A stretch of 64,000 bases of DNA from Ranitomeya imitator (GCF_032444005.1 NC_091291.1:141174001-141238000); one strand, 5' to 3'; positions 826 through 55,200 are shown, counted from the stretch's first letter. Notes: generated by a model not told the origin, from the sequence alone. Numbers and translations are program-made.

Positions 826-3800
826 GGCACATCCCTATACCTCCCATACAGCCGTCACCGCACAGATCTGTCACCTATAGCTCCCATACAGCCGTCACCC
901 ACCACACAGCACAGATGTCACCTATACCTCCCATACAGCCGTCACCACACAGCACAGATCTGTCACCTATACCTCCCATACAGCCGTTACCACAGATCTG
1001 TCACCTATACCTCCCATACAGCCGTCACCGCACAGATCTGTCACCTATAGCTCCCATACAGCCGTCACCCACCACACAGCACAGATGTCACCTATACCTC
1101 CCATACAGCCGTCACCACACAGCACAGATCTGTCACCTATACCTCCCATACAGCCGTTACCACAGATCTGTCACCTATACCTCCCATACAGCCGTCACCG
1201 CACAGATCTGTCACCTATAGCTCCCATACAGCCGTCACCCACCACACAGCACAGATGTCACCTATACCTCCCATACAGCCGTCACCACACAGCACAGATC
1301 TGTCACCTATAGCTCCCATACAGCCGTTACCACAGATCTGTCACCTATACCTCCCATACAGCCGTCACCACACAGCACAGATCTGTCACCTATACCTCCC
1401 ATACAGCCGTTACCACACAGCACAGATCTGTCACCTATAGCTCCCATACAGCCGTCACCACACAGCACAGATCTGTCACCTATAGCTCCCATACAGCCGT
1501 CACCACACAGGACAGATCTGTCACCTATACCTCCCATACAGCCGTTACCACACAGCACAGATCTGTCACCTATAGCTCCCATACAGCCGTCACCACACAG
1601 CACAGATCTGTCACCTATAGCTCCCATACAGCCGTCACCACACAGGACAGATCTGTCACCTATACCTCCCATACAGCCGTCACAGCACAGCACAGATCTG
1701 TCACCTATAGCTCCCATACAGCCATCACAGCACAGCACAGATCTGCCACCTATACCTCCCATACAGCCGTCACCACACAGCACAGATCTGTCACCTATAC
1801 CTCCCATACAGCCGTCACCACACAGCACAGATCTGTCACCTATACCTCCCATACAGCCGTTACCACACAGATCTGTCACCTATACCTCCCATACAGCCGT
1901 CACCGCACAGATCTGTCACCTATAGCTCCCATACAGCCGTCACCACACAGCACAGATCTGTCACCTATAGCTCCCATACAGCCGTCACCACACAGCACAG
2001 ATCTGTCACCTATAGCTCCCATACAGCCGTCACCCACCACACAGCACAGATGTCACCTATACCTCCCATACAGCCGTCACCACACAGCACAGATCTGTCA
2101 CCTATACCTCCCATACAGCCGTTACCACAGATCTGTCACCTATACCTCCCATACAGCCGTCACCGCACAGATCTGTCACCTATAGCTCCCATACAGCCGT
2201 CACCCACCACACAGCACAGATGTCACCTATACCTCCCATACAGCCGTCACCACACAGCACAGATCTGTCACCTATACCTCCCATACAGCCGTTACCACAC
2301 AGCACAGATCTGTCACCTATAGCTCCCATACAGCCGTCACCACACAGCACAGATCTGTCACCTATAGCTCCCATACAGCCGTCACCACACAGGACAGATC
2401 TGTCACCTATACCTCCCATACAGCCGTCACAGCACAGCACAGATCTGTCACCTATAGCTCCCATACAGCCATCACAGCACAGATCTGCCACCTATACCTC
2501 CCATACAGCCGTCACCACACAGCACAGCTCTGTCACCTATAGCTCCCATACAGCCGTTACCACACAGATCTGTCACCTATACCTCCCATACAGCCGTCAC
2601 CGCACAGATCTGTCACCTATAGCTCCCATACAGCCGTCACCACACAGCACAGATCTGTCACCTATAGCTCCCATACAGCCGTCACCACACAGCACAGATC
2701 TGTCACCTATAGCTCCCATACAGCCGTCACCCACCACACAGCACAGATGTCACCTATACCTCCCATACAGCCGTCACCACACAGCACAGATCTGTCACCT
2801 ATACCTCCCATACAGCCGTCACCGCACAGATCTGTCACCTATAGCTCCCATACAGCCGTCACCACACAGCACAGATCTGTCACCTATACCTCCCATACAG
2901 CCGTCACCACACAGCACAGATCTGTCACCTATAGCTCCCATACAGCTGTCACAGCACAGCACAGATCTGTCATCTATACCTCCCATACAGCCATCACAGC
3001 ACAGCACAGATCTGCCATCTATACCTCCCATATAGCCGTCACCGCACAGCACAGATCTGTCACCTATACCTCCCATACAGCCGTCACCACACAGCACAGA
3101 TCTGTCACCTATACCTCCCATACAGCCGTCACCACACAGCACAGATCTGTCACCTATACCTCCCATACAGCCGTCACCACACAGCACAGATCTGTCACCT
3201 ATACCTTCCATACAGCCGTCACCACACAGCACAGATCTGTCACCTATAGCTCCCATACAGCTGTCACCACACAGATCTGTCACCTATACCTCCCATACAA
3301 ACGTCACAGCACAGATATGTCACCTATAGCTCCCATACAGCCGTCACCGCACAGCACAGATCTGTCACCTATACCTCCCATACAGCCGTCACAGCACAGC
3401 ACAGATCTGTCACCTATACCTCCCATACAGCCGTCACCACACAGCACAGATCTGTCACCTATACCTCCCATACAGCCGTCACCACACAGCATAGATCTGT
3501 CACCTATACCTCCCATACAGCCGCCACCGCACCGCACAGATCTGTCACCTATACCGCCCATACAGCCGCCAACGCACCGCACAGATCTGTCACCTATACC
3601 TCCCATACAGCTGTCACCACACAGCACAGATCTGTCACCTATACCTCTCATACAAACGTCACAGCACAGATCTGTCACCTATAGCTCCCATACAGACGTC
3701 ACAGCACAGATCTGTCACCTATAGCTCCCATACAGCCGTCACCGCACAGCACAGATCTGTCACCTATAGCTCCCATACAGCCGTCACCGCACAGCACAGA

Positions 3801-4620
3801 TCTGTCACCTATACCTTCCATACAGACGTCACGGCACAGATCTGTCACCTATACCTCCCATACAGCAGTCACGGCACCTCACAGATCTGCCACCTATAGC
3901 TCCCATACAGCCGTCACCGCACAGATCTGTCACCTATACCGCCCATACAGCCGTCACGGCACCTCACAGATCTGTCACCTATACCTCCCATACAGCCGTC
4001 ACCGCACTGCACAGATCTGTCACCTATACCTCCCATACAGACGTCACAGCACAGATCTGTCACCTATACTGCCCATACAGCCGTCACCACACAGCACAGA
4101 TCTGTCACCTATAGCTCCCATACAGACGTCACAGCACAGATCTGTCACCTATACTGCCCATACAGCCGTCACCACACAGCACAGATCTGTCACCTATAGC
4201 TCCCATACAGCCGTCACCACACAGATCTGTTACCTATACCTCCCATATAACCGTCACCACACAGCACAGATCTGCCACCTATACCGCCCATACAGCCGTC
4301 ACCACACAGCACAGATCTGCCACCTATACAGCCGTCACCACACAGCACAGATCTGTCACCTATAGCTCCCATACAGCCGTCACCACACAGCACAGATCTG
4401 TCACCTATACCGCCCATACAGCCGTCACCGCACCTCACAGATCTGCCACCTATACCTCCCATACAGGTATATATGTCACAGCACAGCACAGATCTGTCAC
4501 CTATACCGCCCATACAGCCGTCACCGCACTGCACAGATCCATCACCTATACCTCCCATACAGGTATATATATCACCGCACAGATCAGTCACCTATACAGG
4601 TATATATAGCACCGCATAAA
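826..4620. repeat. 45/40-bp minisatellite in ACAD8 intron 7 (~85 units)
   Basis: Unit CAGATCTGTCACCTATA(C/G)CTCCCATACAGCCGTCACC(ACACAG)CA; 170-bp higher-order period at 915/1085/1255 and 2050/2220. Confidence 0.97.
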
Positions 4621-4635
4621 TCTGCCGGCTCTCAC

Positions 4636-7600
4636 CTATGTTTATCCTCCCTCCATTCAGTCCTTTCATTGCAATCAGGAATCCTTGGCCTTCCTCACCG
4701 AGCCGGTTTGATACGGGGACGACACAATCCTCAAATATCACCGCTCTTGTTGGCTGCGAGTTCCACCCAACCTGCAGCAGAAATCATTGCGGGGTCACAA
4801 AGGAGAAGACCGGAAACACTCAGCTTTCTGCAGATCCTGAATGGCCTATAAATCAGTACAGGTATACATACCTCCACACATCCAATCCAATGCAGGTCTC
4901 TACACAGCAATTGGCAGGCCACTCAGGGACGTCACCCAGCTTTCTACAGATCCTGAATGGCAGATTTAACTTGCAAAAAGAGGGGTGACAACACTGTCCG
5001 TGCTGCGCTCAGCAGATTGGATGATTATGGGCGAGTGCCGTGAGGCTGTGCAGGTGATTGCACGGTCACACACTAACAGTATCAGTACCAGGTCACACTC
5101 CCTTATTTTGCACACAGATCCGATTTGCCTCCTCACCTTTTTTTCTTTCTTTCCAAAGCTGAGCCCCGGTGTCCCCTTCTCCACCACCAGGCAGGAGATG
5201 CCCCGCGATCCGCTGCCCCCCGTCCTGCACATCACTAGGTACACATCTGTGTCTCCTCCACCGCTGATGAAAGCCTGGAGGATGAAGACGGGAGTGACAA
5301 CGAGCTGCACCCTACAACATTCATGTTACAGCTGAACATCACTCAAATCCTGACACCTGGAGTGGAAACCGTCCTCCTCCTCCCCAGAGGCCGGGAAGCT
5401 GAGATACGAGGCGCTGTTTGTATGGTGAACCATAGATTTACCAGTGATGACAAATGCCAACAGCCCCACATATCTCAGCTTCCCGAGTCCCTACCGGACA
5501 GATCTGTGGTCACATCCAGCACCTTGGATCCATTCAGGAGGTAGTGATCGCCGTCCCGCTTTGCAGATGTCAGCAGAGACGCTGCGTCACTTCCACTGCC
5601 TGGGAATAGCCAGAGAGGAGCGTATCAGTAACATGTCCTCCCGAGGAGGTATACGGTATATACACTGCGATCAGTACTCACCTGGCTCCGTCAGACAGTA
5701 AGACGCAAACTTCTCCATGCTGCAGAGCGCGGGGCAGAGCCGATGCCGCTGATCATCGTTCCCAAACGTGTCGATCATCCAAACACACATACTGAGGGGG
5801 GAGCAGACCATGAACGTGAGCGTCACAGACCACCCGTACAGAGACTGTGAAGGGTTAAACTAAACTAAAGGGCTTAATTTTGTGCTTTTCGAATCCATCT
5901 TGCTGTTTTGAGATAAATTCTGTTACTGGGCTAAAGTTCACAGCTGTTATGAGACCTTGATTGTTTCAGCCTGAACAAGATATGACACTGAGGGTGTATT
6001 GTTCTACGAGACCTTGTCGTACAAGCTGTTCCTGCATTCTTATAGGTTAATAACTGTGAGCGTGTTCTTATGTTGATTGGTTGAAGCATAACTTGTTAAG
6101 ATTATGAAAAGTGTGACACAATAAACGGGGGTCAGAGATCTGCTCGATCCTCCCAAACAGAGACACAGAGACATACGTCTCCGTCTGGTCATTTTCAGTT
6201 GCCTGCAAAACGCCCTGTGGATCAATTTGAAAATCGCTGAGTCAACCGTGAAGGGTCACTTCAGATCCTCCCCCAACAAGACCCCCCTGTACCACATGTC
6301 ACTGCCCCTGCATCAATAGGACGACAGGTGCCGGATTAGAGGAGATGCCGGATTAGAGAAGATTCCGGATTATCAGGGCGGTCATAGAGAAGTATCCAGA
6401 GCTCACTGGTCAGGGAAGAGAGACTCCAGGAAGGAAATATCTAAGGAGGGATCGCCCGAGGCCGCAAAGATGACTTCTGTTCCCCCTGCAAACGCTCCCA
6501 GCAGCCCGGACCCCATCATCACACATGGGGGGCACAGGCTAGAACAGCCAGATTACAGGAGGGAAGAGGAAGATTATTATTATCGTCCCGAAATTAACGA
6601 GGACGTCCAGCAACGGTCTGATGTGTCATCTACTACAACATTGATTTAAGAAGCTTTTGGGGCATTTTATGTTTTTGTTTCTGCTTCGTACTAGTCGTTT
6701 ACAGACAGATGAAATGTGCACAATACGCAGAAACGTCCGGGGTCCCACGGCACATTCATGGGGGGCTATATTTTTTCAGTCCCATCGTCCCTCCCGTATG
6801 AAGGCCGTCCCCATTTTCCCCTGGTGTATACCATTCAGCCACATTGCCCCCACGGGTACAACATCCGACCCCTAGCCACCCAATCTGTAATACATCCGGG
6901 TCCTCACTGCTGGTGTATAACCTCCGGCCCCTCACATCTCCCCTCCAGTGTATAGCCTCGGCCCCTCACACCCCCCCTCCAGTGTATAGCCTCGGCCCCT
7001 CACACCCCCCCTCCAGTGTATAGCCTCGGCCCCTCACATCCCCCCTCCAGTGTATAGCCTCGGCCCCTCACACCCCCCCTCCAGTGTATAGCCTCCGGCC
7101 CCTCACACCCCCCCCCTCCAGTGTATAGCCTCCGGCCCCTCACACCCCCCCTCCAGTGTATAGCATCCGGCCCCCCACACCCCCCTTCCAGTGTATATCC
7201 TCCGGCCCCTCACACCCCCCCTCCAGTGTATATCCTCCGGCCCCTCACACCCCCCCTCCAGTGTATATCCTCCAGCCCCTCACATCCTCCCTCCAGTGTA
7301 TATCCTCCGGCCCCTCTCACCCTCCCTCCAGTGTATATCCTCCGGCCCCTCACCCCCCCCCCTCCAGTGTATATCCTCCGGCCCCTCACATCCCCCCTCC
7401 AGTGTATATCCTCCGACCCCTCACATCCCCCCTCCAGTGTATATCCTCCGGCCCCTCACATCCCCCCTCCAGTGTATATCCTCCGGCCCCTCACATCCCC
7501 CCTCCAGTGTATAGCCTCCGACCCCTCACACCCCCCCCTCCAGTGTACAGCCTCCGACCCCTCACCCCCCCTCCAGTGTATAGCCTCCACCCCTCACACA

Positions 7601-10600
7601 CCCCCTCCAGTGTATAGCCTCCACCCCTCACACCCCCTCCAGTGAATAGCCTCCGGCCCCTCACACCCCCCCTCCAGTGTATAGCCTCCACCCCTCACAC
7701 CCCCCCTCCAGTGTATAGCCTCCACCCCTCACACCCCCTCCAGTGTATAGCCTCTGGCCCCTCACACCCCCCCTTCAGTGTATAGCCTCCACCCCTCACA
7801 CCCCCCTCCAGTGTATAGCCTCCGGCCCCTCACACCCCCTCCAGTGCATAGCCTCCCAACCCCCCCCACACCTCCCCCTTCAGTGTATAGCCTTCAGCCC
7901 CTCACACCCCCCCTCCAGTGTATATCCTCTGACCCCTCACACCCCCCCTCCAGTGTATATCCTCCGGCCCCTCACACCCCCCCTCCAGTGTATAGCCTCC
8001 CACCCCTCCCCCTCCAGTGTATAGCCTCCACCCCTCACACACCCCCTCCAGTGTATAGCCTCCACCCCTCACACCCCCTCCAGTGTATAGCCTCCACCCC
8101 TCACACCCCCCCTCCAGTGTATAGCCTCCACCCCTCACACCCCCTCCAGTGTATAGCCTCCACCCCTCACACCCCCCCTCTAGTGTATAGCCTCCACCCC
8201 TCACACCCCCTCCAGTGTATAGCCTCTGGCCCCTCACACCCCCCCTTCAGTGTATAGCCTCCACCCCTCACATCCCCCTCCAGTGTATAGCCTCCGGCCC
8301 CTCACACCCCCTCCAGTGCATAGCCTCCCACCCCTCACACCTCCCCCTTCAGTGTATAGCCTCCAGCCCCTCACACCCCCCCTCCAGTGTATATCCTCTG
8401 ACCCCTCACACCCCCCCTCCAGTGTATATCCTCCGGCCCCTCACACCCCCCCTCCAGTGTATAGCCTCCTCCCCCTCCAGTGTATAGCCTCCGGCCCCTC
8501 ACCCCCCCCCCTCCAGTGTATATCCTCCGGCCCCTCACATCCCCCCTCCAGTGTATATCCTCTGGCCCCTCACATCCCCCCTCCAGTGTATAGCCTCCGG
8601 CCCCTCACACCCCCCCTCCAGTGTATAGCCTCCACCCCTCACATCCCCCCACCAGTGTATAGCCTCCACCCCTCACACCCCCTCCAGTGTATATCCTCCG
8701 GCCCCTCACACCCCCCCCCCTCACACAATTGCATATGGTGTAGAACTGTAGATGCAGGACAGAGAAGCCCTGGTGATGTAAAGTGGAGGGGGCACATACT
8801 TTTCTGTACATAGTGTATACAGACATTACACATTGGAGCCCATATAGTGCAATCTCCTGTGCAGGATGCAACGTGATCTATGCAGGGGTGCGGGGCGCGG
8901 CATGGTCCATGTCGGGGTGCGGGGTGAGGGTCGTCACGTGGCCCATGGGGGGGCACAGCGCAGTCTGCGGGGGAGCACATTGATGCGATCCATGGGTTGG
9001 TGCTGGTCGTCGCATGGTCTGTGGGGTTGCAGTGCAGTCTGTGGGGCGGTGCGGGTCGTTGTGCGGTCCGTGGGGCGGTGCGGGTCATTGTGCGGTCCGT
9101 GGGGCGGTGCGGGTCATTGTGCGGTCCGTGGGGCGGTGCCGGTCGTTGTGCGGTCCGTGGGGCGGTGCGGGTCGTTGTGTGCTCCTTGGGGCGGTGCGGG
9201 TCATTGTGCGGTCCGTGGGGCGGTGCGGGTCGTTGTGCGGTCCGTGGGGCGGTGCGGGTCGTTGTGCGGTCCGTGGGGCAGGGCGGTGCGGGTCGTTGTG
9301 CGGTCCGTGGGGCGGTGCCGGTCGTTGTGCGGTCTGTGGGGCGGTGCGGGTCGTTGTGCGGTCCGTGGGGCGGTGCGGGTCGTTGTGCGGTCCGTGGGGC
9401 GGTGCGGGTCATTGTGCGGTCCGTGGGGCAGGGCGGTGCGGGTCGTTGTGCGGTCCGTGGGGCAGGGCGGGTCGTTGTGCGGTCCGTGGGGCGGTGCGGG
9501 TCGTTGTGCGGTCCGTGGGGCGGTGCGGGTCGTTGTGCGGTCCGTGGGGCGGTGCGGGTCGTTGTGCGGTCCGTGGGGCGGTGCCGGTCGTTGTGCGGTC
9601 CGTGGGGCGGTGCGGGTCGTTGTGCGGTCCGTGGGGCGGTGCCGGTCGTTGTGCGGTCTGTGGGGCGGTGCGGGTCGTTGTGCGGTGCCGGTCGTTGTGC
9701 GGTCTGTGGGGCGGTGCGGGTCGTTGTGCGGTCCGTGGGGCGGTGCGGGTCGTTGTGCGGTGCCGGTCGTTGTGCGGTCTGTGGGGCGGTGCGGGTCGTT
9801 GTGCGGTCCGTGGGGCGGTGCGGGTCGTTGTGCGGTCCGTGGGGCGGTGCGGGTCGTTGTGCGGTCCGTGGGGCGGTGCGGGTCGTTGTGCGGTCCGTGG
9901 GGCGGTGCGGGTCGTTGTGCGGTCCGTGGGGCGGTGCCGGTCGTTGTGCGGTCTGTGGGGCGGTGCGGGTCGTTGTGCGGTGCCGGTCGTTGTGCGGTCT
10001 GTGGGGCGGTGCGGGTCGTTGTGCGGTCCGTGGGGCGGTGCGGGTCGTTGTGCGGTGCCGGTCGTTGTGCGGTCTGTGGGGCGGTGCGGGTCGTTGTGCG
10101 GTCCGTGGGGCGGTGCGGGTCGTTGTGCGGTCCGTGGGGCGGTGCGGGTCGTTGTGCGGTCCGTGGGGCGGTGCGGGTCGTTGTGCGGTCCGTGGGGCGG
10201 TGCGGGTCGTTGTGCGGTCCGTGGGGCGGTGCGGGTCGTTGTGCGGTCCGTGGGGCGGTGCCGGTCGTTGTGCGGTCCGTGGGGCGGTGCGGGTCGTTGT
10301 GCGGTGCCGGTCGTTGTGCGGTCTGTGGGGCGGTGCGGGTCGTTGTGCGGTCCGTGGGGCGGTGCGGGTCGTTGTGCGGTCCGTGGGGCGGTGCGGGTCG
10401 TTGTGCGGTCCGTGGGGCGGTGCGGGTCGTTGTGCGGTCCGTGGGGCGGTGCGGGTCGTTGTGCGGTCCGTGGGGCGGTGCGGGTCGTTGTGCGGTCCGT
10501 GGGGCGGTGCGGGTCGTTGTGCGGTCCGTGGGGCGGTGCGGGTCGTTGTGCGGTCCGTGGGGCGGTGCGGGTCGTTGTGCGGTCCGTGGGGCAGTGCGGG

Positions 10601-11461
10601 TCGTTGTGCGGTCCGTGGGGCGGTGTGGGTCGTTGTGCTGGCGGTGCCCCCTACTTGTGGATGCTCATGTACGCCGTGGTGCTGACGCATCCTGTAGCCA
10701 GCGCCTCGAATATGATGGAGGTGTCCAGACGAGACAGGCCCGATCCTCCCACGTCTGGACGGGTGTAGATCCCACCGAAGCCGAGCTGTGCCGCCCTCCG
10801 CATGGTCTCCACGGGGAACATCTCCTGTGTGCGGAGGAGGAGGAGGAGATATCGGTCACATTGCAGGATTAGCGCCGCCGCTGTGCGCAGGGAGTGTGCG
10901 GTACTGCAGCTCAGCCCCACATGTCACCACACACATCCCCGGCGGAGCTTCCCCCTCACACGCTCCTTCCTCACCTTCTCATCCCACAGCGCCATGTTTG
11001 GAGACATCTCTTTGGAGGCAAAGTTGAAGGCCACTTTCTGAAACTCCTTCTGCTCCTCACTCAGCCCAATGGAGGCTGCAAAACACGGGAATCACAACAC
11101 CTGCAGCAGAACTACAACTCCCAGCATGCCCTTTTTATAATATCACACCTAGAATTAGTTGCCAAGGGCAACCCCAGTCCTGATAGCGGTTTCCATTCTA
11201 ACCAATCAGAATACAGCATCTTAGTCACATGACAACCCTTGCTCTCTCAGAAGCCGTCATGTGACCTTTCCTGCAGCCGATGAATGACATAAGTCACGTG
11301 TACACCATATTCCCGTTCGCTCCGCCCACTAATTGTTAACCCTTCGTGTCCTTACGATCTACAGCTGAAGCCGTCCCTCTGCCGGGAGCTGCGCTCATCC
11401 CGCTGAGAACATTTCTGAGAGACCGAGAGAGCAGAGATCCGAGCCTGACCCCGAGGGCCAT
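4636..11461 (-). CDS. ACAD8: Isobutyryl-CoA dehydrogenase, mitochondrial; 5' partial (exons 1-7; the remaining exons, 8-11 in human, lie left of position 1)
   Basis: Coding exons (minus strand): 11461-11356, 11075-10975, 10824-10655, 5791-5682, 5599-5523, 5274-5137, 4771-4636; all GT-AG with continuous phase. Translation: [21 protein letters not shown] (Arg-rich, acid-free presequence)...[20 protein letters not shown]...[36 protein letters not shown]...[18 protein letters not shown]...LNGSKAFISGGG...[25 protein letters not shown]...GLNGGRINI, matching recalled vertebrate ACAD8. Confidence 0.97.
5846..6278 (+). mobile_element. Solo LTR (ERV1/Gypsy-type), antisense to ACAD8, in intron 3
   Basis: Starts TGTGAAGGG, ends CCCCAACA; 4-bp target-site duplication AGAC at 5842-5845 and 6279-6282; ATTGG at 6076 and AATAAA at 6120-6125; AT-richer than its flanks. 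Confidence 0.8.
6912..8720. repeat. ~32-34-bp C-rich minisatellite in ACAD8 intron 3
   Basis: Unit CCGGCCCCTCACAC(C)nTCCAGTGTATA(G/T)CCT with a variable C run; G-rich on the ACAD8 sense strand. Confidence 0.97.
9037..10648. repeat. 29-bp CpG-dense minisatellite in ACAD8 intron 3 (~55 units)
   Basis: Unit CGGTGCGGGTCGTTGTGCGGTCCGTGGGG; abuts the exon 3 donor at 10654. Confidence 0.97.
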
Positions 11462-11660: not shown

Positions 11661-11982
11661 ACTATGGCTGGAGGTGTGGGGCCGCACGGTGCTGTGGAGG
11701 AGCGGGCATGCTGGGAGCTGTAGTGCTTACTTTATCATTTACATCGTCTATCTGTAACGTCAGACTCCGCAGCAGCAGAACATCGTCCCACATACTGCAG
11801 AGCAGCGGCCGCCATAGCCCGGAGCATCCCCACACGCCGCAGCACATCGCCAGCCATAGTGACCCGGGCACAGCCGCCCTCTCAGACGGCAGCTTCAGCC
11901 CCATCCGGATCACTGAGCCGCACCCCCCACATCACAGGTCAGCACATGTCTGGACACACGGGAATCCACGGGGCACCGTATA

Positions 11983-12905: not shown

Positions 12906-13203
12906 CCACCCCCCGCCCTGTATACCAGGAGCGCCCCACTAAATTCCCCCTTCCTCCCTATACTGGGAGCGCCCCAAGAGACCCCCAATACACCAGGAGC
13001 GCCCCACGAGACCCCCCTGTACACTGGGAGGGCCCCACCAAATCTCCCCCCGTACATCGGGAGCAACACCACAAAATCCCCCCTCCTCTCCCATACACCA
13101 GGAGCGCCCCACTTGACCCCCCCCCCCCCCCGTGTACCGGGAACACCCCACAAGCACCCCCCATGAGACCCGCATACTGGGAACCCTCCACAAGTCCCAC
13201 CGT

Positions 13204-14014: not shown

Positions 14015-14076
14015 TCGCTGTTCTTTACCTGACTTCACTTTTTTCTTTGAATTTCTAATTTTTCAGGAATTGACCG

Positions 14077-16319: not shown

Positions 16320-16385
16320 CAGGAAAGTGACGACTGAGCGACCGTCTGCACCTCTTCTTTGCTTTTTTTTCCTACTTTTTATAGT

Positions 16386-46200: not shown

Positions 46201-49200
46201 GGTGGTGGTGCATGTGTGCAGGACGGAGTGGTGGTGGTGCATGTGTGCAGGACGGAGTGGTGGTGGTGGTGCATGTGTGCAGGACGGAGTGGTGGTGGTG
46301 GTGCATGTGTGCAGGACGGAGTGGTGGTGGTGCATGTGTGCAGGACGGAGTGGTGGTGGTGCATGTGTGCAGGACGGAGTGGTGGTGGTGCATGTGTGCA
46401 GGATGGAGTGGTGGTGCATGTGTGCAGGATGGAGTGGTGGTGGTGCATGTGTGCAGGATGGAGTGGTGATGGTGCATGTGTGCAGGACGGAGTGGTGGTG
46501 GTGGTGGTGCATGTGTGCAGGACGGAGTGGTGGTGGTGGTGGTGGTGCATGTGTGCAGGACGGAGTGGTGATGGTGCATGTGTGCAGGATGGAGTGGTGG
46601 TGGTGCATGTGTGCAGGACGGAGTGGTGGTGGTGGTGGTGTATGTGTGCAGGACGGAGTGGTGATGGTGCATGTGTGCAGGACGGAGTGGTGGTGCGGGT
46701 GAGCGAGCAGGACTCAAGGGTGAGAGGTGCAGGATGGAGTGGTGGTGGTGCATGTGTGCAGGATGGAGTGGTGGTGCATGTGTGCAGGATGGAGTGGTGG
46801 TGGTGGTGCATGTGTGCAGGACGGAGTGGTGATGGTGCATGTGTGCAGGATGGAGTGGTGGTGGTGCATGTGTGCAGGACGGAGTGGTGGTGGTGCATGT
46901 GTGCAGGACGTGGTGGTGGTGTATGTGTGCAGGACGGAGTGGTGATGGTGCATGTGTGCAGGACGGAGTGGTGGTGCGGGTGAGCGAGCAGGACTCAGGG
47001 GTGAGAGGTGCAGGACGGAGTGGTGGTGGTGCATGTGTGCAGGACGGAGTGGTGGTGGTGCATGTGTGCAGGACGGAGTGGTGGTGGTGCATGTGTGCAG
47101 GACGGAGTGGTGGTGGTGCATGTGTGCAGGACGGAGTGGTGGTGGTGCATGTGTGCAGGACGGAGTGGTGGTGGTGCATGTGTGCAGGACGGAGTGGTGG
47201 TGGTGCATGTGTGCAGGACGGAGTGGTGGTGGTGCATGTGTGCAGGACGGAGTGGTGGTGCGGGTGAGCGAGCAGGACTCAGGCGTGAGAGGTGCAGGAT
47301 GGAGTGGTGGTGGTGCATGTGTGCAGGACGGAGTGGTGGTGGTGGTGCATGTGTGCAGGACGGAGTGGTGGTGGTGGTGCATGTGTGCAGGACGGAGTGG
47401 TGGTGGTGGTGCATGTGTGCAGGACGGAGTGGTGGTGGTGCATGTGTGCAGGACGGAGTGGTGGTGGTGCATGTGTGCAGGACGGAGTGGTGGTGGTGCA
47501 TGTGTGCAGGACGGAGTGGTGGTGGTGCATGTGTGCAGGACGGAGTGGTGGTGGTGCATGTGTGCAGGACGGAGTGGTGGTGGTGCATGTGTGCAGGACG
47601 GAGTGGTGGTGGTGCATGTGTGCAGGACGGAGTGGTGGTGGTGCATGTGTGCAGGACGGAGTGGTGGTGCATGTGTGCAGGACGGAGTGGTGGTGGTGCA
47701 TGTGTGCAGGACGGAGTGGTGGTGCATGTGAGCGAGCAGGACTCAGGGGTGAGAGGTGCAGGATGGAGGGGTGTGTGAGCATGATCCCCTGCCCGACAGC
47801 GGGTGTCTGGAGGGTCAGCAGGGTCCACGTCACACAGCCGGCCCCTGTGAGCCGCGATCGCAGTGATCTGAGTGGTTAATCAGTGGTCACACACCGTCCC
47901 GCGCTCGAGGCTCCCGCCAGCTAATAGTCATGTGATACTCCGGCGCCGCTCCATCGATGCCGGATTACCAGACTCTTGTGTGTCCGCAGCCGCTACCTGA
48001 CGAAGGCGTTTCACATCTGGGCCAAGCGGGATAAATTTACCTCCACGTTAATCAACAACCTGATCTCTCACACGGAGACGGAGCGCGCGGCCTCCGCCTG
48101 GATGCTGCTCTCCAAGGTCGCCGGCTCCGCACCCAAACTGGACTACACTAAAATCCTGATGTCCTGGGAGCAGCTGAGGCGGTAAGTGGGGCGGTAAGTG
48201 GCGCGGTAGGTGGAGCGGTAAGTGGGGCGGTAAGTGCGGATCTCGCCTGCGGGGCTCGTGACGACGCAGAGTTCAGCTTTATTCTGCCTCTTCCAGGGAG
48301 ACGGACGCCGGCTCCAGCGCCACCACCGGGCACATCCTGTGCGTGATCGGACACATCGCCAAACATCTCCCCGCGGAGCGGAGGGCGCAGCTGATCGGTG
48401 AGCCGCAGGGGCCCGTTAGATCTGACCTTGCTGGCAGCGCTTCCTCTCCATTCCTAGGACCTCTGCTTGCTGTCATTGACTCCTCGCCTTCGGAGGCCGG
48501 AAACCATTGAGTCGTGAGTGCCTCTGAGGCGGAGACAGTGGTGTCCGGTGTTCCTCAGCACACGGAGATCTTGTGCTTGTGGTTACGGCTTATTCGTGAC
48601 TCTGTTAATTATAATGGGGGCGCCAGGCAGCAGGTACTGTAATGTCCTCCTCTTACAGATGAAGTAAAGTCCTGGCTGACGGAGTGCACCTTTCCCCCGG
48701 AGATCATCAGTCCGGCTGTGGAGACCCTGCAGAAGTTGTGCTACGCTCACCGGGAGGCGCCTGAAGCCGTGCAGGTAGCGCACCGACACCGCGGCCTCTG
48801 TATACTGCTGTACACGCCGTGCGCTCGCCGGCTCCACCTAGAGGCCGCTGGCAGTAACCGCTCTCCATTTTCTCGGGCTGCAGGAGCTGCTCAATGAGGT
48901 CTGCGGGGACCTGGTGTCCGTCTGCGAGGCGCACATTTCCTCCGTGGTGATGGCCGACACACAGAACGTTCCGTTTGATCAGCAATTAATGGTGAGAGAC
49001 GTAAGATTCTGCACCTTCCATCCTCGTCTAAAAAATATCAACCCTTTCCTGCTCAATGTCAGATATACTGTATACGTCGGGTGTGTGGATCGGCTCCGGT
49101 GCACGCTGTGTCATATGGGGGCGTTTAAGGCAGGCATTCCCGTCCGGCATCTGTACAAATGCCCACCGGCAACCCAGTCTGCACTGTGCTCTGTGAGCTG

Positions 49201-52200
49201 AGCCGCCTGCACTGATACATTGTAGCAAACTATTGGGGATCGAAGAGCGTTGTTTGGACCAGAAACAGTTGCATCCACTGCAGCCTACAGGATTGCAGTC
49301 TGAATGTTGTCTGCATTCACTGACATCAAGCAGAGACTGTGACTTGGAGTCCCTCATTTACTTCCATCCTGTCTATTAACAATGTTCTATTGACTTTATT
49401 TCCACACGTCCTTCCTCTTGTAGCCACAAGGGGGAGCTCTGGTGTAAATCATCTCCGCATAGAAAGTCCTCCCTCTGCTGGCTGTAGATGGAATTACGCC
49501 ATTGTAGACTTTTTGCTAATTTCTCATGTTTTCCTGTTATAATCTTCCCCTTCTTAGGTCCGACATCTCTTCATCCTGGGAGAAGCGGCTCAGCTTTGTC
49601 CGGCACGTGTCGAGAAAAAAGTCCTCCTCCTGGTTCAGTCCATCTTAGCCTCAGTGTCCCCGGAGCAGAGTGAGCGGTGTCTGTGTATGACATATCCTGC
49701 TGTGGGATAAGGTTCGGGGCTGCAGTAACGTCTACCTCTTACTCCATAGACTCAGGTGACACTGAGCAAGATGGCGCCCCGCTGTCCCAACCGCTGTCCC
49801 AACCGCTGTCCCAGTTCCGAGGGTCTTCTATGCCGCCCCTGATCCGAGCCCACGCCTTCATCACACTCGGTGAGAAAACTGCACATTTGTGTTATAGGTT
49901 ATCATTTATAGGGAAAACCTGCAGGTAATGAAATCACAGCTGGCAGAATAGTGAGTGCAGCTCTGCAGTATAGTACAGGATGTAACTCAGGATCAGTAAT
50001 GTAATGTATGTACACAGTGACTGCACCAGCAGAATAATGAGCGCAGCTCTGGGGTATAATACAGGATGTAACTCGGGATCAGTAATGTAATGTATGTACA
50101 CAGTGACTGCACCAGCAGAATAGTGAGTGCAGCTCTGGGGTATAATACAGTATGTAACTCAGGATCAGTAATGTAATGTATGTACACAGTGACTGCACCA
50201 GCAGAATAGTGAGTGCAGCTCTGGAGTATAATACAGGATGTAACTCAGGATCAGTAATGTATTGTATGTACACAGTGACTGCACCAGCAGAATAGTGAGT
50301 GCAGCTCTGGAGTATAATACAGGGGGTAACTCAGGATCAGTAATGTATGTACACAGTGACTGCACCAGCAGAATAGTGAGTGCAGCTCTGGGGTATAATA
50401 CAGGATGTAACTCTGGATCAGTAATGTATGTACACAGTGACTGCACCAGCAGAATAGTGAGTGCAGCTCTGGGGTATAATACAGGATGTAACTCAGGATC
50501 AGTAATGTAATGTATGTACACAGTGATTGCACCAGCAGAATAGTGAGTGCAGCTCTGGGGTATAATACAGGAGGTAACTCAGGATCAGTAATGTAATGTA
50601 TGTACACAGTGACTGCACCAGCAGAATAGTGAGTGCAGCTCTGGAGTATAATACAGGATGTAACTCAGGATCAGTAATGTAATGTATGTACACAGTGACT
50701 GCACCAGCAGAATAGTGAGTGCAGCTCTGGAGTATAATACAGGATGTAACTCAGGATCAGTTATGTAATGTATGTGCACAGTGACTGCACCAGCAGAATA
50801 GTGAGTGCAGCTCTGGGGTATAATACAGATGTAACTCAGGATCAGTAATGTAATGTATGTACACAGTGACTGCACCAGCAGAATAGCGAGTGCAGCTCTG
50901 GAGTATAATACAGGATGGAACTCAGGATCAGTAATGTATGTACACAGTGAATGCACCAGCAGAATAGTGAGTGCAGCTCTGGAGTATAATACAGGAGGTA
51001 ACTCAGGATCAGTAATGTAATGTATGTACACAGTGACTGCGCCAGCAGAATAGTGAGTACAGCTCTGGAGTATAATACAGGAGGTAACTCAGGATCGGTA
51101 ATGTAATGTATGTACACAGTGACTGCACCAGCAGAATAGTGAGTGCAGCTCTGGGGTATAATACAGGATGTAACTTAGGATCAGTAATGTAATGTATGTA
51201 CACAGTGACTGCACCAGCAGAATAGTGAGTGCAGCTCTGGGGTATAATACAGGATGTAATTCAGGATCAGTAATGTAATGTATGTACACAGTGACTGCGC
51301 CAGCAGAATAGTGAGTACAGCTCTGGAGTATAATACAGGAGGTAACTCAGGATCGGTAATGTAATGTATGTACACAGTGACTGCACCAGCAGAATAGCGA
51401 GTGCAGCTCTGAAGTATAATGCAGGATGTTGCGTATACGCAGTGGCTTTCTCTTGGCTTATTCTATATGTAGACTGTATAAATCCTCGTTCTGCACTTTC
51501 TCCCTCAGGGAAGTTGTGTCTGCAGCACGAGGATCTGGCTAAGAACTGTATTCCCGCTCTGGCTCGAGAGCTGGAAGTATCTAATGACTTGGCCATCCGC
51601 AACAACGTGATCATCGTCATCTGTGACCTGTGTGTTCGGTACACTACGATGGCGGACAGATACATCCCTAATGTGTCCGTGTGTCTCCGGGACAGAGACG
51701 CTTTCATCAGAAAACAGACCCTGATCATGCTGACCAACCTGCTGCAGGTGAGCGGCGCGGACCACCGGCACGGACCAGCGGCGCAGTATTTCCAGTGCCG
51801 CTGAGGTTATTTCTTTCTAGCCATTAGTAATAACAATATAACAAGCTATAGACCACCTGAACAATGCTTAGTGGTCCGCCAGCCCCCCAGGGACGGGGCG
51901 TCCTCACATCCGCTTGTTTCCTCATTGCAGGAGGAGTTTGTGAAGTGGAAAGGGTCGCTGTTCTTCCGCTTCGTCAGTGTCCTGGTGGACCCAGACCCCG
52001 ATATCGCCCAGTAAGTCTCTGTGGAGTCGGGGGGCCGGGCCTCGGCTCTGTGCGGGGACCTTACCCTCCGCTCCCACCTTTCAGGTTCGGGGAGTTTTGC
52101 TTGGTTCATCTTCTCCTGAAAAGAAACCCGGTGATGTTCTCGCAGCATTTCATCGAATGCATCTTCCACTTCACGTCCTACGACAAACACGACAAGTACA

Positions 52201-55200
52201 ACAAGTTTCCCCAGAGTGAGAGGTGAGCCCCCCAATGCCACCGCCGCATCGTTTCCCCCTGGACCCGCTGACGGCCGATCTGCATTTTAGGGAGAAGAGA
52301 CTTTTCTCCCTGAAAGGGAAAGAGAACAAGGAGAAGCGGATGAAGATCTACCTGTTCCTGCTGGAGCACTTCACCGACGAGCAGAGGTTCAACCTGACGC
52401 TGAAGATCAGCGAGAACGTGCTAGGTACATCTGCACCCGACCATAACCTACACCTCGCCTGTGGCTCTGCAGCTGGAACTACAAGGCCCAGCATGGCATG
52501 GAAGCAGCAGGCAGTCATATCGCGCTGGGACTTGTAGTTACGACGGAGAACCGCAGGCCGGACGTTGTCCTCCTAGACCTTTTTATGAGGGTTGATGGCG
52601 GTACGTTAGATCTTCTGCCTGGTGGGGTCCGTGCAGTGATCGCCGTCCTTCTCCCTCCGCCCGCAGCGATCTTCGTGGACGGGCTGTTACCGATCGACAT
52701 GGAAGCCAATGAGCTGCTGTCCGACATCTTTGAGATCATGAGCTGCAAGGAGATTAAGTTATCGGCAATGAGGTCAAAACCCGGGGAGGACATCGGCGGC
52801 GGGGATGATGATGAGATGGCCATGGCTGACGCCGTGATGCAGGTGGCACAGAAGAAGCTCATTTCCCAGGTGACGTGGTACCGCTGACGGCCGTGGTTTC
52901 TCTGCGCCGGGTCTGCTGCATCACTTGCTGTTTCGTCTCCCTGCACAGGTCCAGAAGAAGAACTTTGTAGAAAACATCATCCCCATCATCTCGTCTCTGA
53001 AGGGCATGTTGGAGCAGCAGCGGATCCCGGCCATGCGGGACCTCATGAACTACTTGCGGGTAGGTAGCGGTGCGAGGAACCCGCGAGGGTCGTTTGTACG
53101 GGCGTGATGACGTTCTGCTCCACCTGCAGGAGATGATGCAGGACTACCGCGATGAGATCAAGGACTTCTTCGCTGCGGATAAACAGCTGGCGGCGGAGCT
53201 GGAGTACGACATGAAGATGTATGAGGAGCAGCTGCAGAAGGAGCAGGAGAAAACTACTGCGGGTGTACCAGGGAGTCCACAGGTGAGGGGGACGGGCACT
53301 GCCGGTGTACCAGGAAGTCTGTGGGCGAGGGGGACGGGTGCTGCGGGTGTACCTGGGAATCCACAGGTGAGGGGGACGGGTGCTGCCGGTGTACCAGGAG
53401 GTCTGCGGGCGAGGGGGACGGGTGCTGTGGGTGTACCGGGGAGTCTGCGGGTGTACCTGGGAGGCCACAGGAAAGAGGGACGGGAGCTGCGGGTGTACCA
53501 GGGAGTCCACAGGTGAGGGGGACGGGCGCTGCCGGTGTACCAGGAGGTCTGCGGGCGAGGGGGACGGGTGCTGCCGGTGTACCAGGGAGTCTACAGGTGA
53601 GGGGGACGGGCGCTGCCGGTGTACCAGGAAGTCTGCGGGCGAGGGGGACGGGTGCTGCGGGTGTACCTGGGAGGCCATAGGCAAGGGGGACGGGCACTGC
53701 AGGTGTACCAGGAAGTCTGCGGGTGAGGGGGACGGCCGCTGTGGGTGTACCAGGAAGTCCACAGGTGAGGGGGACGGGCTCTGTGGGTGTACCGGGGAGG
53801 CCATGGGTGAGGGGGATGGGTGCTGTGGGTGTACCTGGGAGGCCATGGGCGAGGGGGATGGGTGCTGTGGGTGTACCTGGGAGGCCATGGGCAAGGGGGA
53901 TGGGTGCTGTGGGTGTACCTGGGAGGCCACATGCAAGGGGGACAGGAGCTGCGTGTGTACCTAGGAGGCCACGGGCACTGTGGGTGTACCATGGAGTCTG
54001 CAGGTGTAGGGGATGGGCGCTGCGGGTGTACCGGGGAGTCTGCAGGTGAGGGGGATGGGCGCTGAGGGTGTACCTGGGGGGGCTGGTGCTCTGCCACTGG
54101 ACCTGCTGGGTATAGAGGGGTAGATTATCCCTATAGGTTGTCCTATTGATGGACCCTCCGCTGTGACTAAAGAGGAGCTGCCGCACTTCTCCGATTCCTG
54201 AGACGTCCCGCTTGATGCTTTCGGCTTTTGCTACCAGTTGGGGTTCAGGGGCGCTTCTATTCACATTCACCCCTGGGCCTGTTGTCATCCTCCTGACCGC
54301 GGTGAAATTTTACAACCCTGACCACTGTCCCTTTATGAGGTTATAACTCTGGAGCTTCAGAGGATCCCGGTGATTCTGGGATTGACGTATTGTCCTTCAT
54401 GATAGCGGTAACATTTGTTCACTATGATTTGCATTTATTTATGGCAAAAAAAAAATGGAAATTTGACAAATTCTGAACATTTAGCAATTTTATTTCTTAT
54501 GTCCTTAAATCAGAGAGGGATGACACACAAAATAGTTAATGAATAACATTTCCCACATGTCTACTTTACATCAGCACAATTTTGGAAACCTAACCAAAAA
54601 AAAATTAGGATGTTTGAAGTCACTTTGAGGGGTGTACATGACAGAAAATACCTGAAAGTGACACCATTCTAAAACCTGCTCAACCCCCTCAAGGTGCTCA
54701 AAACCACATTCAAGAAGTTTATTAACCCTTCAGGTGCTTCACAGGAACTGAAGCAATGTGGAAGGAAAAAATGAACATTTAACTTCACCCATGATGGCAC
54801 CACCTGAGAGGGATCCGCCCTGCAAGGACAGGAAATCTACTGAAATAACAGGGCAGTACCTCTCCCCTCACCTCTGTTGGTTTCCTGTCCTTGATGGGAA
54901 CCTTGTGTTGGAATCAGCGGTTTTACAGATGAAAAACAATCCAGGAAGAGACTCCAGACTTTGCTGCAAGCCTTAGGTCTGTTATCAGGGCTGAGGTGGA
55001 AGGTTACCCTAAATCCCTTTGAATAAAAGAAAAGATCTAGGGCGGTCTCTATGGAGTCAGACGATTCTCCACTATCGGGGGGAGAATGTCGCAGTGAGTC
55101 CTCCTCCTCTGACAGTGACTTGGGGGGCAGACCAGGCTTTCCAGTGGAGGACACTGATGGACTAGTCGGACACATTAGGTCAACAATGTGCCTAAAAGAA

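What the first reader, a model, noticed from the sequence alone, without database searches (positions are those of the whole stretch)
826..54075. Minisatellites seeded at, and built from, splice signals across four genes
About 20 unrelated tandem arrays cover ~43% of the window. Seen: most begin or end within 0-75 nt of an exon boundary (ACAD8 introns 3 and 7; the THYN1 acceptor; both ends of VPS26B intron 1; NCAPD3 introns 1, 2, 10, 11, 12, 16, 17, 22, 29). In at least four cases the unit is a recognisable copy of the adjacent splice site. Inference: a locus-intrinsic process expands introns by tandem amplification of exon-intron junction sequence, leaving fields of decoy splice sites that the spliceosome must ignore, with copies often crippled at one key position. 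I do not know this described as a systematic phenomenon.
Basis: partly seen in the sequence, partly recalled or inferred. Interest (0 to 1): 0.72.

Follow-up and report, generated by a model that had tools for sequence, protein, structure and literature searches.

The report
Minisatellite-filled introns in a poison frog
In a poison-frog stretch carrying four housekeeping genes, 43% of the DNA is tandem repeats sitting in the introns, and four of these arrays are amplified copies of a real splice site; this mostly follows from many repeats arising in very short introns, a kind of repeat already known from human genes, so a special splice-site-copying process is suggested but not shown.

Summary
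TRF finds 22 arrays covering 42.8% of the window, and 15 of 20 intronic arrays lie within 75 nt of an exon of ACAD8, THYN1, VPS26B or NCAPD3.

Three arrays are amplified splice junctions beyond doubt: the NCAPD3 intron 2 acceptor and the exon 17 and exon 29 donors. ACAD8 intron 7 is a probable fourth.

- Three large arrays are one 86-bp family. It is 95-98% identical to arrays in the same NCAPD3 introns of Rhinoderma and Dendropsophus, so it is not splice-derived.
- The host introns were short in related frogs (intron 2 about 76 nt, intron 17 about 80 nt).
- Four junction-spanning arrays match the 1.8-3.8 expected from random tandem duplication.
- Closeness to splice sites gives p = 0.002 to 0.89, depending on the intron length assumed.
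- RNA contigs show precise splicing, with the first donor of the 12-bp donor array used.

Junction-spanning minisatellites are known from human F7, IFI6 and CBS. GC-rich minisatellite expansion is known from frog subtelomeres.

This scan noted the same thing before on other DNA of this genome (FLVCR1, ZNRF1, ofd1). A real bias towards intron ends remains a testable hypothesis.

The parts
834..4636 (-). ACAD8 intron 7 array (45/51-bp unit, about 80 copies). Its diverged outermost copy reaches the exon 7 donor at 4636. The sense-strand unit carries AGGTGACAG and AGGTATAGG donor look-alikes.
   Evidence: 84 sense donors; array-like stretch -3..+45 of the donor, p = 0.002. The test on the exon part alone is marginal (p about 0.08).
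6913..8717 (-). ACAD8 intron 3, 35-bp array. It lies 330 free nt from the donor and is not junction-like.
9032..10638 (-). ACAD8 intron 3, 29-bp GC-rich array, 16 nt from the exon 3 donor (exon ends at 10655). The unit has no GT on the sense strand and no similarity to the donor.
   Evidence: p = 0.31
11985..14014 (+). Two 36-bp arrays (11985-12904 and 13205-14014) upstream of the THYN1 ATG exon (acceptor-like site at 14066/14067, ATG at 14077). They probably lie in a 5'-UTR intron, which is not verified. There is no similarity to the acceptor.
   Evidence: p = 0.99
17287..18030 (.). Array (61/103/164-bp periods) between the 3' ends of THYN1 and VPS26B. It is not in an intron.
23281..24812 (-). 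VPS26B intron 1, acceptor-side cluster (27-bp and 22-bp units). It is pyrimidine-rich on the sense strand (Y = 0.77-0.91) and lies 32 nt from the exon 2 acceptor (23248). It resembles polypyrimidine tracts in general, not this acceptor in particular.
   Evidence: ranks 5 and 2 of 102; p = 0.16
27031..28596 (-). VPS26B intron 1, 32-bp array of 49 copies at 99% identity, so very young.
28602..30568 (-). VPS26B intron 1, 39-bp array, 27 nt from the exon 1 donor (exon ends at 30596). It is unrelated to the donor. A 21-nt core is shared with arrays at the same place in Dendropsophus and Engystomops.
   Evidence: p = 1.0; 17/21; Debr against Epus 42/53
31402..33997 (+). NCAPD3 intron 1, array of the 86-bp family (with 40641-42074 and 49943-51429). 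It sits mid-intron with flanks of 84 and 79 nt.
34234..35993 (+). NCAPD3 intron 2, 35-bp array that fills the intron. Its last copy is the real acceptor and includes the first 7 bases of exon 3 (exon starts at 35994).
   Evidence: score 39, rank 1 of 102; p = 0.001; orthologous intron 75-78 nt; the R. variabilis protein uses these boundaries
37715..37815 (+). NCAPD3 intron 7, 27-bp array of 3.7 copies, 47 nt from the donor.
39132..39868 (+). NCAPD3 intron 9 array (26 bp, 39132-39319, 46-69 nt from the exon 10 acceptor) and intron 10 array (31 bp, 39528-39868, 13 nt from the exon 10 donor; its unit looks like an acceptor, not the donor).
40641..42074 (+). NCAPD3 intron 11, 86-bp family array.
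42303..42757 (+). NCAPD3 intron 12, 34-bp G-rich array. Degenerate copies start at +25 of the intron and the array ends 35 nt before the exon 13 acceptor.
   Evidence: p = 0.002
43997..47822 (+). NCAPD3 intron 16, 29-bp G-rich array (125 copies by TRF at 44118-47724). Degenerate copies run from +9 of the intron to 168 nt before exon 17.
   Evidence: p = 0.002 and 0.012; exon 16 joined to exon 17 in RNA
48178..48236 (+). 12-bp unit (GGCGGTAAGTGG) in 4.9 copies. The first copy is the exon 17 donor (exon ends at 48181). The next four copies are in-frame decoy donors.
   Evidence: rank 1; p = 0.001; RNA joins 48181 to 48297 in 3 runs
49943..51429 (-). NCAPD3 intron 22, 86-bp family array in inverted orientation. 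The same family, in the same orientation, sits in intron 22 of Rhinoderma and Dendropsophus.
   Evidence: exon 22 joined to exon 23 in RNA
53257..54079 (+). 42-bp array of about 19 copies. Its first copy is the last 26 bases of exon 29 plus the donor (exon ends at 53282) and it is in frame. Six copies keep CAGGTGAGG and five have GT changed to GC.
   Evidence: score 32, rank 1; p = 0.001; motif counts; the R. variabilis protein goes from the first donor to exon 30 at 58225

Best explanation
The window is a compact, GC-rich gene cluster of a poison frog: ACAD8, THYN1, VPS26B and NCAPD3. According to earlier notes of this scan the species is Ranitomeya imitator, and its exons are 95-100% identical to R. 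variabilis NCAPD3.

Minisatellites are born and expanded at a very high rate in this region. I infer that this is because it is a recombination-hot, probably subtelomere-like region of the kind described for frogs.

The arrays come from several sources:
- local tandem duplications of whatever short sequence was there;
- an old dispersed 86-97-bp repeat family;
- a promoter-proximal array shared with other hyloid frogs.

Exons cannot hold such arrays, and the unique parts of these introns are short (about 75-600 nt ancestrally, and further shortened in this lineage). Every array therefore ends up next to a splice signal. A founding duplication of 12-45 bp often spans the junction itself.

When it does, the outermost copy stays the working splice site: the first donor or the last acceptor. 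The other copies become unused look-alikes that decay. The cell copes by using the outermost site, as in human F7.

Shown: the arrays, their positions, the junction origin of 3-4 of them, their absence from orthologous introns, and correct splicing at six junctions. Inferred: the recombination-driven cause, and the chromosomal position.
For: Density and composition
- Arrays cover 42.8% of the window.
- GC is 54.6%, against 37.5-45.7% at the orthologous loci.
- Orthologous loci carry 1.3% (X. laevis), 3.8% (Engystomops), 9.7% (Dendropsophus) and 18.7% (Rhinoderma) tandem repeats. These loci lie about 61, 60, 19.5 and 6 Mb from a chromosome end.
- This fits the frog pattern of GC-rich, recombining, repeat-rich chromosome ends in PMC10794172.

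Intron lengths
- Orthologous introns 2, 10, 12, 16, 17 and 29 are array-free in all three hyloids. Intron 2 is 75-78 nt and intron 17 is 79-202 nt.
- Array-free introns here are shorter than the ortholog median in 19 of 21 cases, with a median ratio of 0.58.

Expected against observed
- 1.75-3.8 junction-spanning arrays are expected and 4 are observed.

Non-junction sources
- The 86-bp family is 95-98% identical to arrays in introns 1, 11 and 22 of Rhinoderma and introns 1 and 22 of Dendropsophus.
- One array lies outside any intron (17287-18030).

Turnover and splicing
- Array lengths differ between congeners. NCAPD3 spans 32.2 kb in R. variabilis and 28.0 kb here; VPS26B spans 6.2 against 9.65 kb.
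- RNA contigs from four runs splice exactly at the mapped sites and use the first of five tandem donors.
- The human precedent, with the most upstream donor used, is in PMC1557585.
Against: - Under nulls that take present-day or ortholog intron lengths at face value, non-TE arrays are closer to junctions than random seeds. Fisher p = 0.014 and 0.0023. The pooled NCAPD3 test gives p = 0.0025-0.064, with all eight arrays within 47 nt.
- VPS26B intron 1 is long in all frogs (5-8 kb), yet it has arrays 27 and 32 nt from its two ends here, and 38 and 93 nt in Dendropsophus.
- Sense-strand composition follows position. G-rich arrays sit at donors (7 of 9) and C/T-rich arrays at acceptors (5 of 5), Fisher p = 0.021.
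- The chromosomal position of the window and its recombination rate were not testable.
Confidence: 0.62

Rival explanations
1. Junction-biased seeding. Intron ends are themselves preferred birthplaces of minisatellites. The G-rich stretch just after the donor and the polypyrimidine tract before the acceptor are low-complexity, structure-prone DNA. In a region with frequent breaks or slippage they duplicate more often than the intron interior.
For: - Positional excess under three of four nulls.
- G-rich arrays at donors and pyrimidine-rich arrays at acceptors (p = 0.021).
- Two of eight NCAPD3 non-TE arrays hit introns that were only about 76-80 nt long.
- Arrays lie at both ends of the long VPS26B intron 1 in two species, with unrelated units on the acceptor side.
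- Earlier notes of this scan report similar donor arrays in FLVCR1, ZNRF1 and ofd1 of the same genome. These are unchecked and were picked because they looked like this.
Against: - The excess vanishes if the introns were of the region-typical length of 168 nt when the arrays arose (p = 0.89).
- The number of junction-spanning arrays is not in excess (P = 0.06-0.56).
- Non-TE arrays in the other four frogs show no such closeness (mean p = 0.62, n = 9).
- Unique intron sequence has shrunk in this lineage, which alone moves arrays towards exons.
- The sample is small (14 arrays, one window), some arrays are not independent, and array edges were adjusted after looking.
Confidence: 0.28
2. Selected function. 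The arrays are kept because fields of decoy splice sites, or bound splicing factors, regulate the splicing, transcription speed or expression of these genes.
For: - Many sense-strand look-alike sites: 179 donors and 65 acceptors.
- The 42-bp and 12-bp donor arrays are in frame, so use of a later copy would lengthen the protein.
Against: - Units are unrelated between introns.
- The arrays are absent from orthologous introns.
- Total array length differs between congeners.
- Antisense look-alikes are also common: 107 donors.
- Assembled transcripts use only the authentic sites.
- Copies are decaying, for example GT changed to GC in 5 copies of the 42-bp array.
Confidence: 0.05
3. Assembly artefact. 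The arrays are misassembled or inflated repeats and the true introns are short.
For: Long arrays of near-identical units, such as 49 copies at 99% identity, are hard to assemble.
Against: - Exons on both sides of arrays 16, 17 and 22 are joined correctly in RNA contigs.
- The sister species' annotated genes have similar multi-kb spans.
- Independent assemblies of other frogs carry arrays of the 86-97-bp family in the same introns.
- Arrays show internal variants and degenerate edges.
Confidence: 0.03

Closest known systems
Human minisatellites whose first monomer spans an exon-intron boundary: F7 IVS7 (37 bp), IFI6/6-16 intron 2, CBS IVS13 (31 bp), LMNB2, PDGF intron 4 (PMC1557585)
   Same: - A tandem array starts with the last exon bases plus the donor, so the authentic donor is followed by identical or near-identical pseudo-donors.
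- Here this applies to NCAPD3 exon 17 (12 bp), exon 29 (42 bp) and probably ACAD8 exon 7.
- At exon 17 only the most upstream donor appears in assembled transcripts, as in F7.
   Different: - There are several such arrays in one gene and in neighbouring genes.
- One mirror-image case sits at an acceptor: in NCAPD3 intron 2 the last monomer spans the intron-exon boundary.
- The arrays reach 3.7 kb.
- Length polymorphism and rare use of pseudo-sites were not tested here.
Minisatellite/satellite expansion in the GC-rich, highly recombining extended subtelomeres of frogs (Bredeson et al. 2024, PMC10794172)
   Same: - High GC content and very high tandem-repeat density.
- Arrays differ between species.
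- Some arrays come from a dispersed repeat.
- Across four orthologous loci, repeat load rises towards chromosome ends.
   Different: - The window's chromosomal position and recombination rate are unknown.
- Of the tetramers reported as enriched, only ACAG is enriched here, about twofold.
- That paper does not address positions relative to splice sites.
Tandem arrays derived from parts of transposable elements (for example the 52-bp SINE/tRNA-V minisatellite of Xenopus, PMC10794172)
   Same: The 86-bp arrays belong to a family found in several introns, in both orientations and in three frog families. All three arrays here start at about the same phase of the unit.
   Different: No transposon ends, target-site duplications or coding parts were found. 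Whether the shared intron positions reflect old orthologous insertions or repeated insertion is open.
Earlier notes of this scan on the same genome: donor-junction arrays in FLVCR1, ZNRF1 and ofd1; arrays from the histone H1 3' signal; the IST1 intron 1 G-rich array
   Same: A local functional sequence is amplified into kb-scale arrays next to the working copy.
   Different: Those are single cases picked by eye. Here about 20 arrays in one window could be tested against a null.

Membership tests
Junction-spanning minisatellite (F7 IVS7 type) | Tandem array of units of about 10 bp or more, in several copies, inside an intron | tested here: met
   TRF: 12 bp x 4.9, 42 bp x about 19, 45 bp x 80, 35 bp x 50
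Junction-spanning minisatellite (F7 IVS7 type) | The outermost monomer contains exon bases plus the authentic splice site | tested here: met
   The adjacent junction ranks 1 of 102 and shuffle p <= 0.001 for NCAPD3 exon 17 donor, exon 29 donor and exon 3 acceptor. ACAD8 exon 7 donor is probable (p = 0.002; exon part alone p about 0.08). This is not met for the other 10 array/junction pairs tested.
Junction-spanning minisatellite (F7 IVS7 type) | Pseudo-sites are identical or nearly identical to the authentic site | tested here: met
   Exon 17: 4 of 5 copies keep GGTAAGTG. Exon 29: 6 copies keep CAGGTGAGG and 5 have GT changed to GC.
Junction-spanning minisatellite (F7 IVS7 type) | Only, or mainly, the outermost site is used | tested here: met
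   At exon 17, RNA contigs of 3 runs join 48181 to 48297. For exon 29 and exon 3 the only support is the annotated protein of the sister species. Contigs cannot show rare isoforms.
Junction-spanning minisatellite (F7 IVS7 type) | Copy number varies between individuals (VNTR) | not testable with these tools
   The only evidence is indirect: gene spans differ between R. variabilis and this window.
Frog extended-subtelomere minisatellite expansion | Raised GC content and raised tandem-repeat density compared with other regions or orthologs | tested here: met
   GC 54.6% against 37.5-45.7%; tandem repeats 43.5% against 1.3-18.7%
Frog extended-subtelomere minisatellite expansion | Location within the terminal tens of Mb of a chromosome, with high recombination | not testable with these tools
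   The window's position is unknown. Among the orthologs, repeat load rises as the locus lies nearer a chromosome end.
Frog extended-subtelomere minisatellite expansion | Arrays enriched in TGGG, AGGG and ACAG | tested here: inconclusive
   ACAG is 22.3 per kb in arrays against 11.3 outside. TGGG and AGGG are not enriched overall.
Transposon-derived tandem array | The same unit is dispersed at several sites and in several species | tested here: met
   For the 86-bp family only: three introns here, introns 1, 11 and 22 plus VPS26B intron 1 in Rhinoderma, and introns 1 and 22 plus VPS26B intron 1 in Dendropsophus, at 95-98% consensus identity.
Transposon-derived tandem array | Recognisable transposon ends, target-site duplication or a parent element | tested here: not met
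   No shared unique flanks are found in the window and the flanks do not align between species. No parent element was found, so membership stays open.

The most novel reading that the evidence does not exclude
In this poison frog, and perhaps in frogs with very repeat-rich GC-rich regions generally, the two ends of introns are preferred nucleation sites for minisatellites. Splice signals are then systematically amplified into kb-scale fields of decoy sites across many genes. That would be a genome-wide, junction-biased mode of intron growth that has not been described as such.
Probability: 0.28. Interest if true: 0.65.

Novelty: new member of a known kind. Interest (0 to 1): 0.42.

Why it matters
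If the tendency of arrays to start at intron ends is real genome-wide, it would link splice-signal sequence composition to the birth of minisatellites. It would also give a natural collection of hundreds of tandem decoy donors and acceptors for studying how the spliceosome picks the right site.

Even as it stands, the locus shows three things:
- Essential genes tolerate introns that are almost wholly tandem repeat.
- Intron size can change by kilobases between sister species through arrays alone.
- Gene annotation in such genomes must choose among many identical splice sites.

The in-frame 42-bp array at NCAPD3 exon 29 could in principle vary the protein tail.

Tried and rejected
- A point-seed uniform null on TRF edges gave Fisher p = 4e-4 to 1.5e-5. 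I rejected it as too liberal: it ignores the length of the founding duplication, counts adjacent arrays twice and treats later insertions as ancestral intron. I replaced it with finite-seed and pooled nulls.
- DNA of the sister species R. variabilis could not be fetched because the file is too large. Phyllobates and Anomaloglossus proteins are not on record. There is therefore no close-relative intron comparison.
- Looking up the 86-bp unit by sequence in the scan's notes gave nothing.
- Self-comparison of the array-masked window found no shared flanks around the 86-bp arrays. Flanks of the intron 22, 11 and 1 arrays do not align between species, so orthology of the insertions is unresolved.
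- The idea that the VPS26B acceptor-side array is a copy of that acceptor was rejected. The similarity is explained by pyrimidine composition (p = 0.16).
- Similarity of the VPS26B exon 1, ACAD8 exon 3, NCAPD3 exon 10 and exon 16 donors and the THYN1 acceptor to their neighbouring units: none.
- The resemblance of the VPS26B donor-side core to a ZNF143-type promoter motif is from memory and untested.
- Pfam found nothing in the ORFs of the element in NCAPD3 intron 29.
- The tetramer test was inconclusive.
Exons were searched one by one by reference, and junctions were refined only pairwise inside scripts.

Full report
**What is there**

TRF reports 100 rows that merge into 22 arrays with score >=150. 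They total 27,398 bp, or 42.8% of the 64-kb window. The window has no N.

- ACAD8 lies on the minus strand. Its exon 3 matches PDB 1rx0 at E = 6e-26, against 1e-4 for other acyl-CoA dehydrogenases, and it carries the Acyl-CoA_dh_N and _M domains.
- THYN1 lies on the plus strand and has an EVE domain.
- VPS26B lies on the minus strand and has a Vps26 domain.
- NCAPD3 lies on the plus strand. It has a Cnd1 domain and is 77% identical over one exon to X. laevis NCAPD3, P0001.
- A reverse-transcriptase-bearing retroelement fills 60-64 kb.
- ACAD8/THYN1 and VPS26B/NCAPD3 are head-to-head pairs.

Earlier notes of this scan name the species as the mimic poison frog. Consistent with that, the annotated NCAPD3 of Ranitomeya variabilis (P0080) is 95-100% identical to most exons.

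**Exon map**

I mapped NCAPD3 with X. laevis and R. variabilis proteins, refining junctions pairwise. The other three genes were mapped by reading frames and splice consensus. Exon sizes match those of four other frogs almost one for one.

Spliced RNA contigs from four public runs give exactly my boundaries for five joints inside the laid stretch: 48181|48297, 48397|48659, 48774|48884, 48991|49558 and 49669|49750. Their loose ends also join exon 16 to exon 17 and exon 22 to exon 23 across two multi-kb arrays.

Three things are not verified:
- the THYN1 5'-UTR exon;
- ACAD8 exon 8, which is not in the window;
- the NCAPD3 exon 2, 29 and 30 boundaries, which rest on the sister species' protein.

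**Check of the observation**

By TRF edges, 13 of 18 arrays in introns with both ends known lie <=75 nt from an exon. Adding ACAD8 intron 7 (53 nt) and the THYN1 array (52 nt) gives 15 of 20.

The claim that the arrays are unrelated holds with one exception. Three arrays (31402-33997, 40641-42074, and 49943-51429 inverted) are one 86-bp family. No other pair of units is alike.

**Which arrays are made of splice-site sequence**

I compared each unit with all 102 splice junctions of the window.
- The adjacent junction is the top hit, as a clear outlier, for three arrays: the NCAPD3 intron 2 array against the exon 3 acceptor (score 39, next best 22), the 12-bp array against the exon 17 donor (29 against 17), and the 42-bp array against the exon 29 donor (32 against 18).
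- Dinucleotide shuffles give p <= 0.001 for all three.
- In each case the real junction is simply the outermost copy. The intron 2 unit holds the pyrimidine tract, an AG and the first 7 bases of exon 3. The 12-mer holds the last 4 exon bases plus GTAAGTGG. The 42-mer holds the last 26 exon bases plus the donor and 16 intron bases.
- ACAD8 intron 7 is a probable fourth. The exon part alone matches weakly (an 11-nt match, p about 0.05-0.09). However, the stretch from -3 to +45 around the donor is colinear with the 51-bp unit variant (p = 0.002).
- The donors of ACAD8 exon 3, VPS26B exon 1 and NCAPD3 exons 10 and 16, and the THYN1 acceptor, show no similarity to the neighbouring unit (p = 0.3-1.0). 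The VPS26B acceptor-side array matches pyrimidine tracts in general (p = 0.16).

**Where the arrays came from: other frogs**

I fetched the orthologous VPS26B-NCAPD3 loci of X. laevis, Engystomops pustulosus, Rhinoderma darwinii and Dendropsophus ebraccatus. Three results follow.

First, repeat load and GC content are far lower there.

| Locus | Tandem repeats | GC |
|---|---|---|
| X. laevis | 1.3% | 37.5% |
| Engystomops | 3.8% | 42.1% |
| Dendropsophus | 9.7% | 45.7% |
| Rhinoderma | 18.7% | 45.7% |
| This window | 43.5% | 54.6% |

. Repeat load rises as the locus lies nearer a chromosome end, at about 61, 60, 19.5 and 6 Mb respectively. This is the pattern described for frog extended subtelomeres: GC-rich, highly recombining, and with minisatellites expanded by unequal exchange, some of them from transposon pieces (PMC10794172).

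Second, the orthologous introns 2, 10, 12, 16, 17 and 29 carry no arrays in the three hyloids. Several are very short: intron 2 is 75-78 nt and intron 17 is 79-202 nt. The junction-derived arrays are therefore lineage-specific and arose in short introns.

Third, the 86-bp family is not local. Its consensus is 95-98% identical to 92-97-bp arrays in introns 1, 11 and 22 and VPS26B intron 1 of Rhinoderma, and in introns 1 and 22 and VPS26B intron 1 of Dendropsophus. The 39-bp array next to VPS26B exon 1 shares a 21-nt core with arrays at the same place in Dendropsophus and Engystomops.

Its annotated NCAPD3 spans 32.2 kb against 28.0 kb here, and its VPS26B spans 6.2 kb against 9.65 kb, so array lengths differ between congeners.

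**Is closeness to splice sites more than chance?**

The answer depends on the null.

| Null | Arrays tested | Result |
|---|---|---|
| Point seed, TRF edges (rejected as too liberal) | 17 | Fisher p = 4e-4 |
| Finite seed, present free intron length | 14 non-TE | Fisher p = 0.014 |
| Finite seed, ortholog median length | 14 non-TE | Fisher p = 0.0023 |
| Finite seed, all introns at the region-typical 168 nt | 14 non-TE | Fisher p = 0.89 |
| Pooled over all NCAPD3 intron sequence | 8 non-TE | geometric-mean distance 6 nt against 21-70 nt, p = 0.0025-0.064 |

- The point-seed test ignores that the founding duplication has a length, counts adjacent arrays twice, and treats later insertions as ancestral intron.
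- The finite-seed null places a seed as long as the unit uniformly over the intron and its two junctions. For it, array edges were extended by degenerate copies.
- In the pooled test, all eight arrays lie within 47 nt of a junction.
- The number of junction-spanning arrays, four, is not in excess of the 1.75-3.8 expected (P = 0.06-0.56).
- Nine non-family arrays in the other four frogs show no closeness (mean p = 0.62).
- Unique intron sequence has shrunk in this lineage. Array-free introns are shorter than the ortholog median in 19 of 21 cases, with a median ratio of 0.58. That alone pushes arrays towards exons.

Two observations do point to a real link with intron ends.
- On the sense strand, arrays nearest a donor are G-rich (7 of 9) and arrays nearest an acceptor are C/T-rich (5 of 5), Fisher p = 0.021.
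- The long VPS26B intron 1 has arrays at both ends, here and in Dendropsophus.

**Decoy sites**

At a threshold set at the 10th percentile of the window's real sites, the arrays hold 179 donor-like and 65 acceptor-like sites on the sense strand. They hold 107 and 32 on the antisense strand.

Crippling is partial.
- In the 42-bp array, six copies keep CAGGTGAGG and five read GGGCGAGG.
- Four of the five 12-mers keep a good donor.
- About 8 of 50 intron 2 units pass as acceptors.

The assembled transcripts use the first donor at exon 17. This is the rule shown experimentally for human F7, where the first monomer of a 37-bp minisatellite spans the exon 7 boundary. The same paper lists IFI6, CBS, LMNB2 and PDGF as further cases (PMC1557585).

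**Verdict**

The reading that splice junctions are amplified is right for three, probably four, arrays.

The reading of a locus-intrinsic process aimed at junctions is not needed for the number of such arrays. It is contradicted for the 86-bp family and the VPS26B promoter-side array. For the positions of the rest it is only suggestively supported.

The best explanation (about 0.6) is a very high rate of minisatellite birth and growth in a GC-rich, probably recombination-hot region with short introns. A true bias towards intron ends (about 0.3) is the interesting rival and needs a genome-wide test.

This scan has noted the same kind of array before on other DNA of this genome: FLVCR1, ZNRF1 and ofd1.

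Noticed in passing
window 31402-33997, 40641-42074, 49943-51429; L003 3581-5733, 10602-12574, 23595-24225, 31610-32872; L004 6036-6289, 10303-11009, 25665-26222: An 86-97-bp tandem-repeat family has 95-98% identical consensus units in three frog families (Dendrobatidae, Rhinodermatidae, Hylidae). It sits in the same NCAPD3 introns: intron 22 in the same orientation in all three, intron 11 in two, and intron 1 in all three but flipped here. Engystomops and Xenopus lack it. It is either a very old retained insertion or a mobile element with a target preference. No transposon ends were found.
   Followed up: partly
window 28602-30568; L004 8267-9218; L002 8954-9189: Arrays next to VPS26B exon 1 in three hyloid frogs share a core (TGCTGGGAC.TGTAGT...CCCC). 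The Dendropsophus and Engystomops units are 79% alike. From memory the core resembles a ZNF143-type promoter motif, which also occurs as single copies in NCAPD3 intron 1 of the other frogs. This was not tested.
   Followed up: partly
window 53257-54079: The 42-bp array at the NCAPD3 exon 29 donor is in frame (14 codons). Six copies keep a strong donor, so use of a later copy would add 14-residue blocks to the protein tail. Only the sister species' annotation, which uses the first donor, bears on this.
   Followed up: partly
window 54497-54770 and 57537-57874: Inverted repeats of about 84% identity bracket about 3.4 kb inside NCAPD3 intron 29. This looks like a DNA-transposon-like insertion. 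Its ORFs have no Pfam match.
   Followed up: partly
window 60173-63723 (minus strand): Retroelement with a reverse transcriptase (RVT_1, E = 4e-14) and an ORF matching the LAP2alpha domain (E = 8.5e-12). It lies downstream of NCAPD3, carries no tandem arrays, and is probably DIRS/Ngaro-like.
   Followed up: partly
window 27031-28596: A 32-bp unit repeated 48.9 times at 99% identity directly abuts the older 39-bp array (83% identity). A very recent expansion sits next to an old one.
   Followed up: no
window, all array-free introns of NCAPD3: Unique intron sequence is systematically shorter here than in three other hyloid frogs (19 of 21 introns, median ratio 0.58), although this species has a much larger genome. 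The region is locally compacted while being inflated by arrays.
   Followed up: partly
window 24880-25730: There are direct repeats about 400-440 nt apart (24889, 25328, 25689) and an inverted pair (25028-25123 and 25491-25581, 90% identity) inside VPS26B intron 1. This is a long-period degenerate repeat or a hairpin-forming element.
   Followed up: no
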